From the NCBI GenBank assembly GCA_977017575.1, contig CDRNVI010000187.1:1-64000 (forward strand): a stretch of 64,000 bases of DNA. The letters run 5' to 3'. A program made the position numbers and the translations under genes. A model generated the notes under the pieces. That model saw only the letters and a list, made by a program, of their open reading frames with translations, was not told the origin of the DNA and did not search any database. Below are positions 19,971 to 34,901 of this stretch, in pieces (the first letter of the stretch is position 1; every line of letters starts with the position of its first letter). This DNA is from Paramoeba atlantica. Lineage: Eukaryota > Protista > Discosea.

Positions 19971-20317
19971 GAAATAAAAGTCCTCTTCTCGTTTCTCCTT
20001 CTCTCTCTTTTTTCTTTTTCTCTTTCTTTCCTTCTCTTTCTCTCAACGAAAATTGTTATCCTTCTCCCACCCACCTTCCTCTCACAATCGTGAAACACAA
20101 TCGGCCAGACAAAAATGAGCAATTTTAGCTCTTGCTGACAAAAAGGGCACTAAAATTTTTGGTTTCAGCTCTTCTTTCTTCTTGATGCTCTTTCGTTGTT
20201 TTCATTTTTCTTCCATTGCAACTGGACCTCTTTCTCTCCAATCTTTCATTACTTCTTCTTCTTCTACTTTCTTTTCTTTTTTTCAAAAAAAGAAAAGTTG
20301 CACAAACGCTATCAAAA

Positions 20318-21450
20318 ATGGATCAATTGGATGAATTGAATGATTTCAAAAAAGAAAATGGGGAAGCGATTTGGACTTATGCACAAACAGGAGATGTTGA
20401 AATAATGAAAGCTTTTTTGGAGAAGTATCCTCATATTCTTCATCTTCGAAATCAGGGCGCTTCTGTTTGTTTTTTCTTTTTTTCTGAGATTGACCAGACC
20501 AAAACTAACTTTTTTCTTTACCACTTAGGGTTATGTTCTCTTTTTTGCTTCTTTTTATTTGATGATTTGTCTCAATTTCTTCGACTTCTCCTTTTCTTTT
20601 CACTAGACCGTCTTGCATTTTGCAGCAGTAAAAGGAAGAACGGAGATGGCTGAACTCTTTCTTTCTTTAGGAGCAGAAGTTGATCGTGATGATGTTCTCT
20701 TCTTTTTTTATTTCACCAATAATTTCTAATTGTTCTAATTTTCATTTAGAATCTTTGATTTTTATTTGTTACTCTCTTTTTTAACTCTTTTCTCTCTGGC
20801 AGAGGGTTTGTTTGATTCCCATTCTCACAAAAATTGGAAGTTAAATATTCCCTTTTTAACTTCTTCCCACTTTCTCTCTTTTTTTCCCTCCTGTCGACTA
20901 GGATGGAGACACACCGCTCCATCGAGCGTCAAGATGGAACCATCCAAAGACTTGTTCTCTTTTACTCAGTGCTGGTGCTAATCCTCATCATAAAAACAAC
21001 AGTGGAATGGTTTCTTTTTTTTTGTTTATTTCTTTTTTATCTTTCAAAATTGAGAATAATAATAATATTTTCCTTGAAATAGTCACCAATCGATGTTGCT
21101 CGAAGATTTTCAGGAAACCCTGAATTTATTCATCTCTTAGAGGTTCCTTTTTTTTTAATTGAACCCAAGATTCAGATCAAACATTGAACCCTGAGTTCAA
21201 AACAATTTTCTTTTTGAGTGAACAAACCACATATTATTCTGATTATCCATTTGTTTTTATTTAGAATTCAAATGTTTCTACGATCAAACCAGCAAAAAGA
21301 TGAGTGATGATCTAAAATTATTGAAGGCTCAAAACGAAAATGTGAAGGATGAAAATATATGGTCAATAGAACAAAATAATATTAAAATAATAATCAAATA
21401 TTATTTTATTTATTTCAGTTTAGAAGAACATTCTCTTTTCAAAAAGATTT
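20318..21450 (+). CDS. Short ankyrin-repeat protein
   Basis: MDQLDELNDFKKENGEAIWTYAQTGDVEIMKAFLEKYP...|TVLHFAAVKGRTEMAELFLSLGAEVD|DGDTPLHRASRWNHPKTCSLLLSAGANP. The C-terminal end is approximate. Confidence 0.75.
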
Positions 21451-21591: not shown

Positions 21592-22650
21592 CTAGAAGAG
21601 AGTATGAACTTTACGAGTCGCAGTAGAAGATAAAGTTTGGGCTGCAAGTTCTTCCGAACTTTCATTTCTTTGCTCATTTCTTCGTTCCTTTTTATCAACT
21701 TTATAACCAGGCAAAAAGAACAATCCTTCATTTTCCTTTTCTCCAGGAGAATCTTCTGATTGAATTGGGGGCTCATATTCATCATCCAAACGAATCCCAT
21801 CATCATCATCTTCTTCTTCTTCCTCTTTTCCATCGAGCACAACAGTTTCAAAATTAATATTGGAATAGCCAGGCATTCCACGATCTTCTTTTTCTGTGAT
21901 CGCAAGAGGTTTCGCTTCTCGTCCACCTCCAAAAATACCTTCATGTAGTTGGTTCCCTTCTTGTACAACTCGGATAATCATAGTTTCCATCTCTTTCGAT
22001 TTAATAAAATGAATTGGTGAAAATCCAAGTTCTTCCTAAAAAGAATTAAAGGTAAAAAAATTATTAAAAAAAATCAATTCGAAAAAAAAGAAACAAGAAA
22101 TTCTCTCTAGAGAACCTTCGCTTGATGATCTGCTCCCGCTTCCAACAGAATACTTGCAAATTTGACGTTATTTTCTCGAATTGCAATATGTAATGGTCGA
22201 TCTCCTTGTTCCTTTTTTAATTCTTAAGATTTCAAGTAACAACTTGTTTCAAAAAGAAGGAGAGAGGAAAGAAAGAGAGAAAGAAAGAGAAAGAAAGAGA
22301 AAGAAAGAGAAAGAAAAAAAGAAAAAACAAACATCGCCAACGTTCACATAAGCGTGCTCATCAATCAACAAAGCCCCAACCTCAACCGAATTCCAAAGAG
22401 CAGCCAAATGAAGAGGAGTATAACCATAATCATTTTGAGCATTAACATCAGAGCCATACTGAAACAACATCTTTGCAATCTCAGGATAATTTCCCTTTGC
22501 AGCAAAATGAAGAGCTGTGTATCCAAAATCTGGGTGTCTTTTATCGATGTCTAACGTCCCATCTGCGGCTTGTGAAGTCAACAGACTTTGGACAGCCTCT
22601 TTGTCTCCACTTTCAACAAGATCGAAGAGTGTGCTTGGCCCTCCTCCCAT
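21592..22650 (-). CDS. Ankyrin-repeat protein with possible N-myristoylation site and acidic tail
   Basis: MGGGPSTLF...GYTALHFAAKGNYPEIAKMLFQYGSDVNAQNDYGYTPLHLAALWN...|GDRPLHIAIRENNVKFASILLEAGAD|...acidic C-terminal exon (ORF 21592-21990). Confidence 0.85.
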
Positions 22651-23033
22651 CCTTAAGAAAAGACAATTTTGATCCTTAAGAAAAGTATTTTCAAATTGTT
22701 TTTCAAAAACTCCAACGCAAAAACACAAAAACCAAAAAAAAAAAACAAAAACAAAAAACATACAGAAAAATCATTTTCCTCCTTTTTCGGGGTTGTTTTG
22801 CACTCATCGCCTCAAAAATGAATTCCATGAATTTTCAGTGCTCCCCGCAGGTTGTGGGTTCAAGCCCCTTCGAAATCATTTTTTCTCTTTTTTTTCTTTT
22901 TGTTTTTTGAAACGTGGCGATTGGAGGAGGCTTTTCTCTTCTCTTTCTCCGTCTCTTTTTCTTTTGAAACTCGTTTTGTTTGTGAAAAGTTGGTTTTTGA
23001 ATTTGATTCTTGACTTTGTGAGTTTTTTTTTCC

Positions 23034-27700: not shown

Positions 27701-28100
27701 ATTTATTATTTATTATTTTCTTTTTCTTTTTCTTTTTCCAAAATTTCTTGTCACTAATCTTTTATTTGAATCAAGTTGATTCGCTTTTTAGTTCAAACAG
27801 TTTCTCTTGATACAAAATCTCTTTGTATGATTATCCCAGGAACGATGGTAATCGCAATCTTTATTCAATGGGCAATTCGTCTGATTCTTCTTCGTTCATG
27901 TTGTCGCCATTCTCAAAATATTTCGGTTTGAATTTTTCAAAATTTCACAAAAAAACGAAAACAAAAGAAAAAGAAAAAGACAGAAGAAAAAAAGACAAAG
28001 AAGAGAGACTGATGAGGTTTTTTTCATTATTTTCTAGGAACTTGTTGATCCAGGACTTGAAAAGATTGAACGATTTACAATGCTCAAGGCAATTGTTTGA
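23034..28100 (+). CDS. TAPT1: TAPT1/Emp65 (DUF747) membrane protein with a long low-complexity N-terminus
   Basis: FLSIPYKLEKFMMYG...ESFLSVFSFLPLR; YHLIRGQAMLKLYVIFNTLD|VFDKLCCAFG; HSLVLF...TLNVAVNSYNNALIPLLISNQFIELKGMVFK; DIVER; LIVDWIKHAFVTKFN; terminal LEKIERFTM. The start may instead be a short exon at ATG 22818. Confidence 0.88.
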
Positions 28101-28523
28101 ACCATTTTTGAGAGTACAGAAACAGAAACAGAATTGTTGTTGTTTGTTATTTATTGTTTGTTGTGGAGAGAGAGGGAGAAGCCCAGACCAAAACATAGGA
28201 CACAACACGAAAAGAACTATTTAATTAGAAAAAAAAACTCAGAAATTGTCTTCTTTCTCATCATTGTTTCTTTTTCCTCTCAGCTTTTTCTCCAGCCAAT
28301 CAAAAATTGGTGTATTTTGGGACACCATTAATTTTCATACCCTTCACTCAAAATAAAGAGAAAAAGTCCCGACTCAATCTTTTTGCGAATTCTCTCTCTC
28401 TTATTTTTTCCGCTTTCTCCTCCTTTTTTTTCTCCCTCTCTTCTCTTCTTTCACAACTTTTTTCGAACCCCCAGAAAACATCTCTTCTCTTCTCTTCTCT
28501 CTCCAACCACACAAAAAAGAAAG

Positions 28524-30745
28524 ATGGATGATGAAGAAAAATATCCAAACAAAGAAACAAAGGAACTTTTTGAAGGTGTTGAGAAAGGGGATGAAGAAGT
28601 TGTGAAAGTTCTTCTTCTTGGAAACAAAAACAAACAATTCGAACTTGATATCAACTTCCAATTCAAAGAAAGGGTTTTTTTCTTTTCAAATTCAATTTAT
28701 TTCTTTCTCTCTCTCTCTTTCTCTCTTGTTGTTTCTGATGTGATGGAGTATGAGTGGTTGTGTGATTGTGTTGTTGTTTTTTAACAACTTCTTTGTTGTT
28801 AAAGATTGGAAAGACCGCTCTTCACTTTGCTGCTTCGAATGGTTCTGAACAAATTGTGAAAATTCTTGTTGAACATGGATCCAATGTTGATCTTCAAGAT
28901 ACAGTTTTGATTTTTTTTTTTTTTATTATTTCTTTGTTTTATCTCATTTTTTATTTATTTTGTTATTCTAGTTCATTATTGGTTGTTTCATGTTGTTGTT
29001 GTGAATGGTTGTATGATATTTATTTTGTTTTGTTGTTTTTTTAACAACTTTCTTTTTGTTAAAGGATGGATATACCGCTCTTCACATCGCTGCTGATAAA
29101 GGTTTTGAACAAATTGTGAAGATTCTGATTGGACATGGATCCAATGTTAATCTTCAAGAAGCCTCAGTTTTCATTTTCTTTTTCTTTTTCTTTTCATTAT
29201 TCTTCGATTTTCTGATATTTTTGATTTGTTGTTCTGGTTCATTGTTGGTTGTTTGATGTTGATTGTTGTTTCGCGGTTGTGTTGTGTGATATTTATTTTG
29301 TTTGTTGTTTTTTAACAACTTCTTTTTGTTAAAGATTGGATGGACCGCTCTTCACTTAGCTGCCGATAAAGGTTTTGAACAAATTGTGAAAATTCTTGTT
29401 GAACATGGATCCGATGTTCATCTTCAAACCTCAGTTTTCATTTTCTTTTTCTTTTTATTTTCATTATTCTTTGATTTTTCTTATATTTTTGATTTGTTAT
29501 TCTGGTTCATTGTTGGTTGTTTGATGTTGATTGTTGTTTCGCGGTTGTGTTGTGTGATATTTATTTTGTTTGTTGTTTTTTAACAACTTCTTTTTGTTAA
29601 AGATTGGATGGACCGCTCTTCACTTAGCTGCCGATAAAGGTTTTGAACAAATTGTGAAGATTCTTATTGAACATGAATCCAATGTTAATCTTCAAACCAA
29701 AGTTTTCATTTTCTTTTTTTTTCCTTTTTCTTTTTATTTCTTTGTTTTATCTCATTTTTTATTTATTTTGTTATTCTGATTCATCATTGGTTGTTTCATG
29801 TTGTTGTTGTTGTGAATGGTTGTGATATTTATTTTGTTTTGTTGTTTTTTTAACAACTTCTTTTTGTTAAAGGATGGATGGACCGCTCTTCACATTGCTG
29901 CTGGGAATGGTTTTGAACAAATTGTGAAGATTCTTATTGAACATGGATCCAATGTTAATCTTCAAACCAAAGTTTTCATTTTCCTTTTTTTTTCCTTTTT
30001 CTTTTTCTTTTGTTGTTATGATTCATTATTGGTTGTTTCTTGTTGTTGTGAATGGTTGGGTTGTGTGATATTTGATTTATTTTATTTATTTTTTAACAAC
30101 TTCTTTTTGTTAAAGTATGGATGGACTGCTCTTCACTCTGCTGCTGAGAAAGGTTTTGAACAAATTGTGAAGATTCTTATTGAACATGGATCCAATGTTA
30201 ATCTTCAAGAAGCCTCAGTTTTCTTTTTCTTTTTTTTTTGATTTTGATTTTTATTTCTTTGTTTTGTTCTTTTTTTAATCACTTCTTTTTGTTAAGAATG
30301 GAAGGACCGCTCTTCACAATGCTGCTTTCGAAGGTTTTGAACAAATTGTGAAGATTCTTGTTGAACATGGATCCAATATTCATCTTCAAACCAAAGTTTT
30401 CATTTTCATTTTGATTTTCATTTTTGGCACTTTTTACTTGTTGATTTGTGATGGATTGTGGTGAGAATGGGGGGATGGGGGAGGATGGAGGGAGAGAGGG
30501 GTTTGAAGTGGTTCTTTTTTTAAACTTTTTTTTAAAACTTTCTTTTTTCTTTTGTGTGTTAGGATGGTAAAACAGTGTTTGATATTGCAAAAGATCAGAA
30601 CATTGTTGAATTAATCATCCAATTGAAGGTTTTCTTTTTTTTCTTTTTTGACATTTTCCTCTTTTTTTTAAAATTTTTTTTGATTTTTTTTTGGTTGTAG
30701 GGACGAACGATCAAACCAGCTCAACAAACAAAAAAAGAAAATTAA
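28524..30745 (+). CDS. Ankyrin-repeat protein with one repeat per exon (N-cap exon, 7 repeat exons, C-cap exon, terminal exon)
   Basis: Exons 28524-28673, 28805-28903, 29065-29166, 29335-29433, 29603-29701, 29873-29971, 30116-30217, 30297-30395, 30563-30628 and 30701-30745. All introns are GT-AG, phase 0. Repeat consensus xGxTALHxAAxxGFEQIVKILIEHGSNVNLQxx. Confidence 0.93.
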
Positions 30746-30989
30746 AGTTTTGGCAATAATTTGAGGAAACAGAAACAGAATTGTTGTTGTTTGTTGTGGA
30801 AACGGCCGATCCAGTTCCCAAACATCAATTCTTCCTTTTGGCGAATGAAATAATGAGAGCACTTGGTACTTGGCGAGAGAGTCCCCTGTATCACTAACTC
30901 TAAAACTATTACCCAATAAAAGACCCTTTTTTTCAATTTTTTTTTGATTATTCTTTTGATTCTTTTTTCTTTCTTTGTGAAAGAACAAA

Positions 30990-31392
30990 ATTCAGACCCT
31001 TCACTTAAAATAAATAGAAAAAGTCCCGACACATTCTTTTCGGGGATTTTCTCTTTCTCATCTCTTTTTCCGGTTTTCTCCTCCTTTTTTTCTCTCTTCT
31101 CTTTCTCACCTTTTTTCCTCTTCTCTTCTCTTCTCTCTCTCTCTGTGTCACACAAAAAAGAAGATGGATGAAGAAGAAGAAGAAAAAGCAAACAAAGAAA
31201 CAAAGGAACTTTTTGAGGTGTTGAGAAAGGGGATGAAGAAGTTGTGAAAGTTCTTCTTCTTGGAAACAAAAACAAACAATTCGAACTTGATATCAACTTC
31301 CAATTCAAAGAAAGGGTTTTTTTCTTTTCAAATTCAATTTATTTCTTTCTCTCTCTCTTTCTCTCTCTTGTTGTTTCTGATGTGATGGAGTA
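30990..31392 (+). pseudogene. Truncated, frameshifted duplicate of the 5' flank, first exon and intron start of the ankyrin-array gene
   Basis: Close copy of about 28340-28750. The ATG at 31164 reads MDEEEEEKANKETKELF; then gaaggtgtt has become gaggtgtt (-1 nt), giving an early TGA. No repeat exons follow. Confidence 0.8.
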
Positions 31393-34400: not shown

Positions 34401-34901
34401 AAAATTACACAACAAAAAGAGAAAAAAAACAAATAAAAAATCACACAACAAAAAGAGAGAAAAAAAAAAAACAAATCAACCTGAGGGTTGGTGGTTAATT
34501 CTCTCATGCGTTTGTTCCATCTCCAACTCTCATAATATCTCTTCAAACCGTACAAAGCGGCACCTGTTTGATGTGTTGGTTGTGTTGGTTGTGTTGGTTG
34601 TGTTGGTTGTGTTGGTTGTGTTGGTTGTGTTGGTTGTGTTGATTGTGTTGATTGTGTTGGTGGTTGTGTTGATTGTGTTGGTGGTTGTGTTGATTGTGTT
34701 GGTTGTTGTGGTGGTTGTGTTGATGGTTGTGTTGATTGTGTTTGATTGTGTTGGTTGTGTTGATGGTTGTGTTGATTGGTTGGGTTGGTTGGTTGTACAT
34801 TAAAATAAAGAAAAAAATTGACCTGTCAGAATAACAAAAGCAAAAGTTTTCCGATCTCTTTGTAATTTGAACCCCAAGATTTTTTCCAAGTAAGCAAGCA
34901 T
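31486..34901 (-). CDS. Carotenoid oxygenase family protein (RPE65/BCO/CCD-like), multi-exon
   Basis: WIEGTLYRGGPG, HWF|DG, NVNVTI..GGKLYSMTD. Four Fe-His motifs: SASHGHHDP, SYLHS, FHTINAYE, FGFHG. Also ELPRIDPR and PGEPIFLP. Start MLAYLEKILGF at 34901. Confidence 0.9.
34570..34800. repeat. Degenerate 9-bp minisatellite (gttggttgt)n in intron 1 of the carotenoid oxygenase
   Basis: Direct tandem repeats are visible and lie between the GT donor near 34822 and the CAG acceptor near 34565 on the minus strand. Confidence 0.85.

What the first reader, a model, noticed from the sequence alone, without database searches (positions are those of the whole stretch)
28524..30745. Natural DARPin-like cassette gene: one ankyrin repeat per symmetric phase-0 exon, with variation confined to binding-surface positions
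Seen: seven 99/102-nt exons each encode exactly one 33-34-aa repeat and are flanked by near-identical introns (acceptor ttaacaacttctttttgttaa(a)g, donor gtttt). The framework TALH.AA..GFEQIVKIL.EHGSNV.LQ is almost invariant even at the DNA level. Position 1 (I/D/I/I/D/Y/N), position 3 (K/Y/W/W/W/W/R), position 8 (F/I/L/L/I/S/N), positions 11-12 (SN/DK/DK/DK/GN/EK/FE) and the last residues (DT/EAS/TS/TK) vary radically. Distinct N-cap and C-cap exons bracket the array. Known: these hairpin and helix-1 positions largely coincide with those randomised in designed ankyrin repeat proteins to create new specificities. Inference: a diversifying recognition system in which any exon can be skipped, duplicated or swapped in frame (up to 2^7 skip combinations), possibly an immune-like or prey/symbiont receptor family. 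This is my best candidate for an undescribed system here.
Basis: partly seen in the sequence, partly recalled or inferred. Interest (0 to 1): 0.82.

Follow-up and report, generated by a model that had tools for sequence, protein, structure and literature searches.

The report
Hypervariable one-exon-per-repeat ankyrin binder gene
This is an intact gene from a family of about 50 small ankyrin-repeat proteins in a protist, each repeat sitting in its own copy-and-paste exon; the scaffold stays constant while the target-contacting residues change about 2.6 times faster than neutral DNA, which points to an inherited set of binding proteins whose targets are unknown.

Summary
Window 28524-30745 (+) holds a 10-exon, 319-codon gene: an N-cap exon, seven ankyrin exons (five of 99 nt, two of 102 nt), a C-cap exon and a short tail exon. 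All exons are phase 0 with AG/GT borders. The repeat exons and their introns form a tandem cassette array (period 268 nt).

The locus is not unique. The 45.7-Mb assembly holds about 53 arrays of this kind, with 1 to 18 or more repeats. I recovered 284 one-repeat exons.

Variation concentrates at exon positions 1, 3, 8, 11, 12 and 33. Five of these six match positions randomised in DARPins. Nonsynonymous change there is 2.6 times the framework synonymous rate (95% CI 2.1-3.3) and 2.7 times the intron rate.

The protein has no signal peptide, membrane segment or NACHT partner. It does have a tail conserved across the family (ending KKEN).

A truncated, frameshifted second copy lies at 30991-31392.

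The best reading is a germline repertoire of intracellular binders that diversifies by cassette turnover and selection. The closest known analogue is the highly conserved ANK repeats of fungal NLRs. Exon skipping or swapping at the RNA level is untested.

This scan has already found the same family five times on other contigs of this genome.

The parts
28341..28373 (+). Conserved upstream box, about 150-180 nt before the ATG
   Evidence: The 33-nt box occurs only 5 times in the 45.7-Mb genome, each time upstream of an N-cap exon of the closest family members (C187 twice, C163, C138, C200), with 0 control hits.
28524..28673 (+). Exon 1: start codon and N-cap (50 codons), a degenerate capping ankyrin repeat
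   Evidence: Open from the ATG to a gtttt donor in phase 0. It has 39 matches in its own genome. It has no Pfam hit, but weak phmmer matches align residues 13-45 to the helices of generic ANK repeats.
28805..28903 (+). Ankyrin repeat exon R1 (99 nt)
   Evidence: AG|99 nt|GT, phase 0; Pfam Ank E 5e-10.
29065..29166 (+). Ankyrin repeat exon R2 (102 nt)
   Evidence: Ank E 2e-9.
29335..29433 (+). Ankyrin repeat exon R3 (99 nt)
   Evidence: Together with R4 it forms the youngest duplicate pair: introns differ by 5.8% and the hypervariable residues are identical.
29603..29701 (+). Ankyrin repeat exon R4 (99 nt)
29873..29971 (+). Ankyrin repeat exon R5 (99 nt)
   Evidence: Ank E 4e-11.
30116..30217 (+). 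Ankyrin repeat exon R6 (102 nt)
30297..30395 (+). Ankyrin repeat exon R7 (99 nt), the positionally conserved last repeat
   Evidence: The last repeat of the paralogues shares the SNI(N/H)(I/L)Q signature.
30563..30628 (+). C-cap exon (22 codons)
   Evidence: There are 58 C-cap matches in the fetched family loci and 63 DNA matches for the 3' part of the gene.
30701..30745 (+). Tail exon (14 codons plus stop) encoding the family-wide conserved C-terminal peptide G-R/Q/K-T-I-K-P-A-x-x-K-K-E-N
   Evidence: Tails were recovered after 42 of the 58 C-cap exons; most keep T-I-K-P-A and 24 end in KKEN.
28766..30239 (+). Tandem array of exon+intron cassettes (period about 268 nt)
   Evidence: TRF: 5.6 copies, 83% matches, score 1686. 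Repeat families D1 and D2. Six of the seven cassettes have their best match inside this gene, at 83-90% identity including introns; R6's top match is a chromosome-163 unit.
30991..31392 (+). Truncated second gene copy: upstream box, exon 1 with a 1-nt deletion (frameshift) and 77 nt of intron 1, then a break
   Evidence: D5 98%, D7, D8; match with a stop inside; alignment A1.
30770..30789 (+). 20-nt marker of the local duplication boundary; the other copy is at 28123-28142
   Evidence: These are the only two occurrences in the window and in the whole genome. Spacing is 2647 nt.

Best explanation
This is an intact member of a lineage-restricted, fast-evolving family of stand-alone capped ankyrin-repeat proteins. 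The family has about 50 genes in this 45.7-Mb protist assembly.

Shown: each internal repeat is one phase-0 exon of 99 or 102 nt with its own intron. The arrays grow and shrink by duplication and loss of whole exon+intron cassettes. In this gene the array expanded or was homogenised in place.

Shown: the N-cap, the last repeat, the C-cap and a 13-14-residue C-terminal tail are constant across the family. Five or six residues per repeat, at the beta-turn and in helix 1 on the concave binding face, change faster than neutral sites.

Inferred: the family is a germline-encoded repertoire of soluble intracellular binding or adaptor proteins. Their variable faces track changing ligands, such as proteins of parasites, symbionts, viruses or selfish elements. 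The constant tail could couple them to a common partner. Diversity comes from many genes, cassette turnover and selection on point or micro-conversion changes. No dedicated splicing or somatic mechanism is indicated.
For: Gene model with open exons and canonical splice sites. Pfam Ank on every repeat exon. Cassette array.

Family size and architecture N-A(n)-C with n from 1 to 18.

Entropy exceeds 2.8 bits at positions 1, 3, 8, 11, 12 and 33, against less than 1 bit at the core framework positions.

For 41 exon pairs chosen on the upstream intron only: hypervariable pN 0.352, framework pS 0.136, downstream intron 0.130, framework pN 0.086. The ratios are 2.59 (CI 2.08-3.34) and 2.71 (CI 2.21-3.36). 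Framework pS over intron is 1.05, so the two neutral yardsticks agree. An independent pairing scheme gives 3.8-5.0 against synonymous sites and 2.2 against introns.

Of differing hypervariable codons, 61% differ at 2-3 bases, against 15% of framework codons. Their transition/transversion ratio is 0.45, so there is no C-to-T bias.

Six of this gene's seven cassettes are each other's best matches. Its closest paralogues by N-cap have only 2-6 repeats. The tail is conserved. There is no hydrophobic run longer than 6 residues.
Against: No RNA or protein evidence for this gene or for any family member was obtainable. No ligand, localisation or phenotype is known.

The excess at hypervariable codons could partly reflect short conversion tracts that import existing variants from other repeats rather than new mutations. 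Because the framework is identical, such tracts would be invisible elsewhere.

My exon finder required 9 of 13 framework residues. This inflates the apparent framework conservation, although it does not affect the comparison of hypervariable sites with neutral sites.

Exon pairs are short (33 codons) and belong to one family tree. No strain or species comparison was possible.
Confidence: 0.7

Rival explanations
1. It is a combinatorial splicing machine. Because every repeat exon is symmetric and phase 0, the cell would skip, repeat or trans-splice exons to produce many isoforms from each locus. On this view RNA processing, not gene number, is the main source of diversity.
For: All seven repeat exons are phase 0, are multiples of 3 in length, and have almost identical acceptor and donor sequences. 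Any subset would therefore stay in frame and still fold as a shorter ANK stack.
Against: There is no transcript evidence either way. Two searches with the N-cap returned only read-through ORF calls on genomic contigs. The germline already holds about 53 arrays of different lengths, which explains the diversity without special splicing. The positionally conserved last repeat and caps suggest a fixed order.
Confidence: 0.1
2. It is an ordinary young tandem duplication with relaxed surface positions. The repeats look uniform only because they duplicated recently, and the variable positions are simply unconstrained surface residues drifting neutrally. On this view there is no recognition repertoire.
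For: The cassettes are young (introns 6-17% diverged). The variable positions are the ones that vary in all ankyrin repeats. Framework dN/dS is a moderate 0.63.
Against: Neutral drift predicts dN/dS of about 1 at those codons. The observed values are 2.6-2.7 with confidence intervals excluding 1, against two independent neutral yardsticks. Even exon pairs with no framework synonymous difference have hypervariable pN of 0.47. About 53 capped arrays and 284 repeat exons with open frames and splice sites argue for retention by selection.
Confidence: 0.12
3. It is a concerted-evolution artefact. Frequent short gene conversion among repeats homogenises the framework and shuffles a fixed pool of hypervariable codons. 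The apparent rate excess would then come from templated swapping without positive selection.
For: Most differing hypervariable codons differ at 2-3 bases. Hypervariable divergence is nearly independent of framework divergence. Within this gene, framework synonymous divergence (8.4%) is half the intron divergence.
Against: Family-wide, framework synonymous divergence equals intron divergence for pairs chosen on the upstream intron (ratio 1.05). Exon-limited homogenisation is therefore not general. Maintaining a large pool of alternative codons at exactly the binding-face positions would itself need diversity-favouring selection.
Confidence: 0.08

Closest known systems
Highly internally conserved ANK/TPR/WD repeat domains of fungal NOD-like receptors (Podospora HNWD/NLR genes; Dyrka et al. 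2014, PMC4986451; PMC12222747)
   Same: Both have near-identical tandem repeats, variable repeat number, and a handful of positively selected positions per repeat that map to the concave binding face of the ANK stack. In both, recombination between repeats is thought to drive diversification. Both are intracellular.
   Different: Here there is no NOD (NACHT or NB-ARC) or effector domain. The protein is only caps, repeats and a short tail, and no NACHT hit lies near any family locus. Each repeat is a separate exon with its own intron, whereas I know of no such layout reported for the fungal arrays. Internal identity is 79% (90% outside the five variable sites), below the 85% criterion used for the fungal repeats. 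Repeat-number variation is shown between paralogues, not between strains.
Designed ankyrin repeat proteins (DARPins: N-cap, consensus internal repeats with randomised positions 2, 3, 5, 13, 14 and 33, C-cap)
   Same: Both have the architecture N-cap, n near-consensus repeats, C-cap. Natural hypervariable exon positions 1, 3, 11, 12 and 33 correspond to DARPin positions 3, 5, 13, 14 and 2, and semi-variable H/K/Y at exon position 24 corresponds to DARPin position 26 (the mapping is from my own knowledge of the DARPin consensus). Single repeats match DARPin and consensus-ANK structures in the PDB.
   Different: This is a natural, genome-encoded family. It has an extra variable site at exon position 8 (DARPin position 10, fixed Leu). 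DARPin position 33 is not variable here. It carries an added conserved C-terminal tail. The resemblance is partly built in, because the DARPin positions were derived from natural ANK variability.
Repeat proteins whose units coincide with exons (for example the 99-bp repeat exons of vertebrate ankyrin genes; general survey in PMC3995336)
   Same: One repeat per symmetric exon, with growth by exon duplication.
   Different: In those genes the repeats are old and diverged, and the repeat number is fixed. Here the exon+intron cassettes are young (83-90% identical including introns) and their number varies from 1 to 18 or more among paralogues. The statement about vertebrate ankyrin genes is from memory and was not checked here.
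Expanded, fast-evolving ANK protein families of intracellular symbionts and giant viruses (for example Wolbachia ANK genes; cited within PMC4986451)
   Same: Large families of ANK-only proteins linked to interactions between organisms, with variable repeat number.
   Different: This family has spliceosomal introns and lies among ordinary host genes, so it is host-encoded. A family signature search found nothing in viral contigs.

Membership tests
Pfam Ank (PF00023) ankyrin repeat | Each unit scores above the curated gathering threshold (21.1 bits) | tested here: met
   All seven repeat exons score 35-43 bits, E 1e-8 to 4e-11. The N-cap and C-cap exons give no hit.
DARPin-like capped ANK architecture | Dedicated N- and C-terminal capping units flank near-consensus internal repeats | tested here: met
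   The N-cap and C-cap exons are conserved across the family and distinct from the internal repeats. N-cap residues 13-45 align weakly to ANK helices.
DARPin-like capped ANK architecture | Variability confined to library positions 2, 3, 5, 13, 14 and 33 | tested here: inconclusive
   Five of the six natural hypervariable positions map to library positions. Exon position 8 is an extra variable site, and library position 33 (exon position 31, Gln) is conserved.
Fungal-type NLR with highly conserved repeats | A NOD domain (NACHT or NB-ARC) N-terminal to the repeats | tested here: not met
   The gene model has only caps and repeats. The three NACHT hits in the genome lie on contigs without family loci. 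NB-ARC was not searched.
Fungal-type NLR with highly conserved repeats | Internal repeat identity above 85% over at least 100 residues | tested here: not met
   Mean pairwise identity is 79% (range 71-87%), or 90% outside the five hypervariable sites.
Fungal-type NLR with highly conserved repeats | Positive selection at binding-face positions | tested here: met
   Hypervariable dN over framework dS is 2.59 (CI 2.08-3.34), and over intron divergence 2.71.
Fungal-type NLR with highly conserved repeats | Repeat-number polymorphism between isolates | not testable with these tools
   Only one assembly of this genome is available. Contigs of ENA assembly ERZ24900291 are at most 89% identical to this locus and are not syntenic. 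Variation between paralogues is 1 to 18 or more repeats.
Combinatorial or somatic diversification systems (Dscam-type alternative exons, VLR-type cassette assembly) | Alternative or somatic use of cassette exons, demonstrated in RNA or DNA | not testable with these tools
   No transcript-derived sequences were found.

The most novel reading that the evidence does not exclude
The family is a protist innate-recognition or adaptor repertoire built like a natural DARPin library. About 50 germline genes would present hypervariable concave faces to fast-evolving foreign or selfish proteins. The invariant C-terminal tail (ending KKEN, which resembles a dilysine KKxx-COOH signal) would dock every member onto one common cellular machine, for example for trafficking or disposal. 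Cassette exons might add further isoform diversity.
Probability: 0.2. Interest if true: 0.8.

Novelty: new variant of a known kind. Interest (0 to 1): 0.5.

Why it matters
If the inference holds, a free-living or parasitic protist keeps an inherited library of small soluble binding proteins. Its logic (constant scaffold and caps, variable paratope, variable repeat number) matches what protein engineers designed as DARPins and what fungi use in NLR sensors. Here, however, the proteins stand alone and each repeat is an exon cassette.

That would extend repeat-based diversification of recognition proteins to another eukaryotic lineage. It would also offer a natural set of more than 280 scaffold-compatible repeat variants. 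The conserved tail gives a concrete handle for finding the pathway these proteins feed into.

For genome annotation, the family is invisible to prokaryote-style gene callers. Every database relative I inspected is a read-through ORF fragment.

Tried and rejected
(1) Transcript or annotated-protein evidence. A word search with the N-cap, using the natural open frame 28332-28781 with region 65-114, and a full phmmer search of 1.84 billion representatives gave only read-through ORF calls. All six I traced come from ENA assembly ERZ24900291. Neither search yielded a spliced product, so splicing order and isoforms remain untested.

(2) Strain comparison. The flank of L060 is absent from this genome. 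L061's best match to this locus is 83-89% identical. Neither is allelic, so no array polymorphism test was possible.

(3) Relatives elsewhere. A back-translated GFEQIVKIL pattern gave 10 JGI metagenome hits, all chance matches outside ANK genes, and no viral contig hits.

(4) NLR link. NACHT hits are not near family loci.

(5) The 20-nt motif after the stop codon is not a general terminator signal. It occurs only twice in the genome and marks a local duplication.

(6) A RIP-like or C-to-T mutational origin of the hypervariability is rejected. The transition/transversion ratio at hypervariable codons is 0.45, the same as in introns.

(7) Subtelomeric location. Of 25 close N-cap hits, 11 lie within 20 kb of a contig end. 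But contig C207 starts inside an ANK array and no telomere repeats were seen, so this may reflect assembly breaks in repeats.

(8) Structure prediction and whole-protein searches of the spliced product were left out, because the exons may not be joined here. All protein work was done exon by exon, by reference.

Full report
**Observation.** I read window 28000-31300 and translated it in three frames. This gives a clean 10-exon model on the + strand:
- exon 1, 28524-28673: start codon and a 50-residue N-cap;
- seven repeat exons: 28805-28903, 29065-29166, 29335-29433, 29603-29701, 29873-29971, 30116-30217 and 30297-30395;
- a 22-codon C-cap exon, 30563-30628;
- a 14-codon tail exon, 30701-30745, ending in TAA.

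Five repeat exons are 99 nt and two are 102 nt. All exons are phase 0, with AG acceptors and GTTT donors. The coding sum is 957 nt, or 319 codons. Each repeat exon alone exceeds the Pfam Ank gathering score; the caps do not.

Tandem Repeats Finder reports an exon+intron unit of 268 nt, 5.6 copies, 83% matches. The repeat finder shows the same cassettes.

All protein searches were therefore done exon by exon, by reference. Whole-protein searches and structure prediction of the spliced product were left out.

**The local context.** Directly downstream, 30991-31392 repeats the gene's upstream box, exon 1 and the first 77 nt of intron 1. The 3' part of this copy is 98% identical to the original. 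It carries a one-base deletion that shifts the frame, and the similarity then stops. A 20-nt marker just after the stop codon (30770) recurs at 28123, and nowhere else in the 45.7-Mb genome. The locus is therefore the remnant of a tandem duplication with a unit of about 2.65 kb, whose second copy was truncated. In a contig of ENA assembly ERZ24900291 (L061), the same spacer from C-cap to next N-cap links complete genes in a tandem array, at 89% identity.

**A large family.** The cassette array has 108 DNA matches in its own genome. The N-cap has 39 and the 3' end 63. I fetched 39 stretches. A simple finder (AG, then 96-105 open nucleotides, then GT, with 9 of 13 framework residues) recovered 284 one-repeat exons: 210 of 99 nt and 73 of 102 nt. 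With the caps mapped, the loci read N-A(n)-C. There are about 53 arrays ending in a C-cap, not counting a C207/C178 duplicate, and n runs from 1 to 18.

The closest paralogues by N-cap (85-88% identical) have only 2-6 repeats. Six of the seven cassettes of this gene have their best match inside the gene, at 83-90% identity including introns; R6's top match is a chromosome-163 unit. The seven-repeat array therefore expanded or was homogenised in place. R3 and R4 are the youngest pair. The last repeat, the C-cap and the tail are positionally conserved across genes.

**Where variation sits and how fast it accrues.** Across 279 exons, entropy is 2.9-3.6 bits at exon positions 1, 3, 8, 11, 12 and 33. 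It is below 1 bit at the core framework positions. On the DARPin consensus numbering, which I take from my own knowledge, exon position p equals DARPin position p+2. Five of the six hot positions are then library positions (3, 5, 13, 14, 2), and exon position 24 (H/K/Y) is DARPin position 26.

To avoid ascertainment bias, I chose 41 mutual-nearest exon pairs using only the 130 nt of upstream intron. I then measured the exon and the downstream intron:

| Site class | Proportion differing |
|---|---|
| Hypervariable nonsynonymous | 0.352 |
| Framework nonsynonymous | 0.086 |
| Framework synonymous | 0.136 |
| Downstream intron | 0.130 |

- The two neutral yardsticks agree (ratio 1.05).
- The hypervariable rate is 2.59 times synonymous (bootstrap 95% CI 2.08-3.34) and 2.71 times intronic (CI 2.21-3.36).
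- Framework dN/dS is 0.63.

A second scheme, pairing on the exon itself, gives 3.8-5.0 against synonymous sites and 2.2 against introns. Within this gene alone the values are 0.48 (hypervariable), 0.042 and 0.084 (framework nonsynonymous and synonymous) and 0.166 (intron).

Differing hypervariable codons usually differ at 2-3 bases: 61%, against 15% of framework codons. Their changes show no transition bias (ts/tv 0.45, as in introns). This excludes a RIP-like C-to-T process. Hypervariable divergence is near saturation even between exons with identical framework synonymous sites. This fits strong diversifying selection, templated swapping of codons between repeats, or both.

**What the protein is likely to do.** No exon has an uncharged or hydrophobic run longer than 6 residues. 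The N-terminus is acidic, so the protein should be soluble and intracellular. No NACHT domain lies near any family locus.

The tail exon is conserved through the whole family, including a divergent 102-nt subfamily. Its pattern is G-R/Q/K-T-I-K-P-A-x-x-K-K-E-N. I read this as a constant handle on a variable binder. The final KKEN resembles a dilysine KKxx-COOH signal, but that is only a resemblance.

My best explanation is a germline repertoire of small intracellular ankyrin binders or adaptors. They diversify by cassette duplication and loss and by selection on the concave face. The architecture, the family and the rate excess are shown. The binding role and any conflict-driven selection are inferred.

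[quoted passage not shown] Those show repeat-number polymorphism and positive selection at five ANK positions on the concave face (PMC4986451; also PMC12222747). This family differs in three ways. It lacks any NOD or effector domain. It places each repeat in its own exon. Its internal identity is 79%, or 90% outside the variable sites.

Correspondence between exons and repeats is itself common (PMC3995336). Single repeats match ankyrin-1/2, consensus ANK designs and DARPins in the PDB.

The N-cap has no relatives among 1.84 billion representative proteins beyond read-through ORF fragments. All those I traced come from one ENA assembly, ERZ24900291. A family signature found nothing real in JGI metagenome contigs or viral contigs. 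I found no paper describing this family.

**Earlier notes of this scan.** The same family was reported five times on other contigs of this genome (s1-369837, s1-369893, s1-369817, s1-386236, s1-403597). Those reports gave rate excesses of four- to five-fold. My independent estimate is lower with the unbiased pairing (about 2.6) and similar with exon-based pairing. One note says RNA shows in-order splicing; I could not verify that. Another (s1-389408) suggests the organism is the amoeba Paramoeba; I did not test this.

**Verdict.**
A diversifying multigene family is supported. Combinatorial splicing is untested. A surface receptor is unlikely.
- It is a new variant of a known kind.
- New points for this locus are the in-place array expansion, the truncated frameshifted neighbour, the family-specific upstream box and the conserved C-terminal tail.

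Noticed in passing
window 22249-22761 (-) and 20216-20653 (+): There are two other ankyrin-type genes upstream. The minus-strand ORF starts MGGG (a possible myristoylation site) and encodes several ANK repeats inside one exon. This organism's ordinary ANK genes therefore do not follow the one-repeat-per-exon rule.
   Followed up: no
window 28341-28373 and 30998-31030: A 33-nt upstream box ending in AAAAAGTCCCGAC occurs only five times in the genome. Each copy lies about 150-250 nt upstream of an N-cap exon of the closest family members. It is a candidate subfamily promoter element.
   Followed up: partly
window 34572-34796: A long imperfect TGTGTTGGT microsatellite (24 copies). On the minus strand it reads as an HNQ-rich run inside an ORF.
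   Followed up: no
L046 (G000:C191:10000-19500), L032 (C201), L045 (C189): A divergent subfamily with mostly 102-nt repeat exons, short introns of about 75-80 nt and up to 18 repeats. It has the same C-cap and tail but no detectable N-cap of this gene's type, so its 5' exons are unidentified.
   Followed up: partly
L074/L075 (ena:ERZ24900291:ctg3805c): A 31.6-kb contig labelled circular carries the same family gene twice, about 13 kb apart. This could be an assembly artefact of a tandem repeat or an extrachromosomal element.
   Followed up: no
G000:C207:1-6500 versus G000:C178:93000-98500: Two contigs carry identical family arrays, with the same scores throughout. C207 begins inside an ANK array, so it is either a haplotig or a recent segmental duplication, and an assembly break within the family.
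   Followed up: no
G000:C112:1813-2364: The only strong NACHT match in the genome lies in a 987-residue open frame without stops near a contig start. It is either an intronless gene or a contaminant.
   Followed up: no
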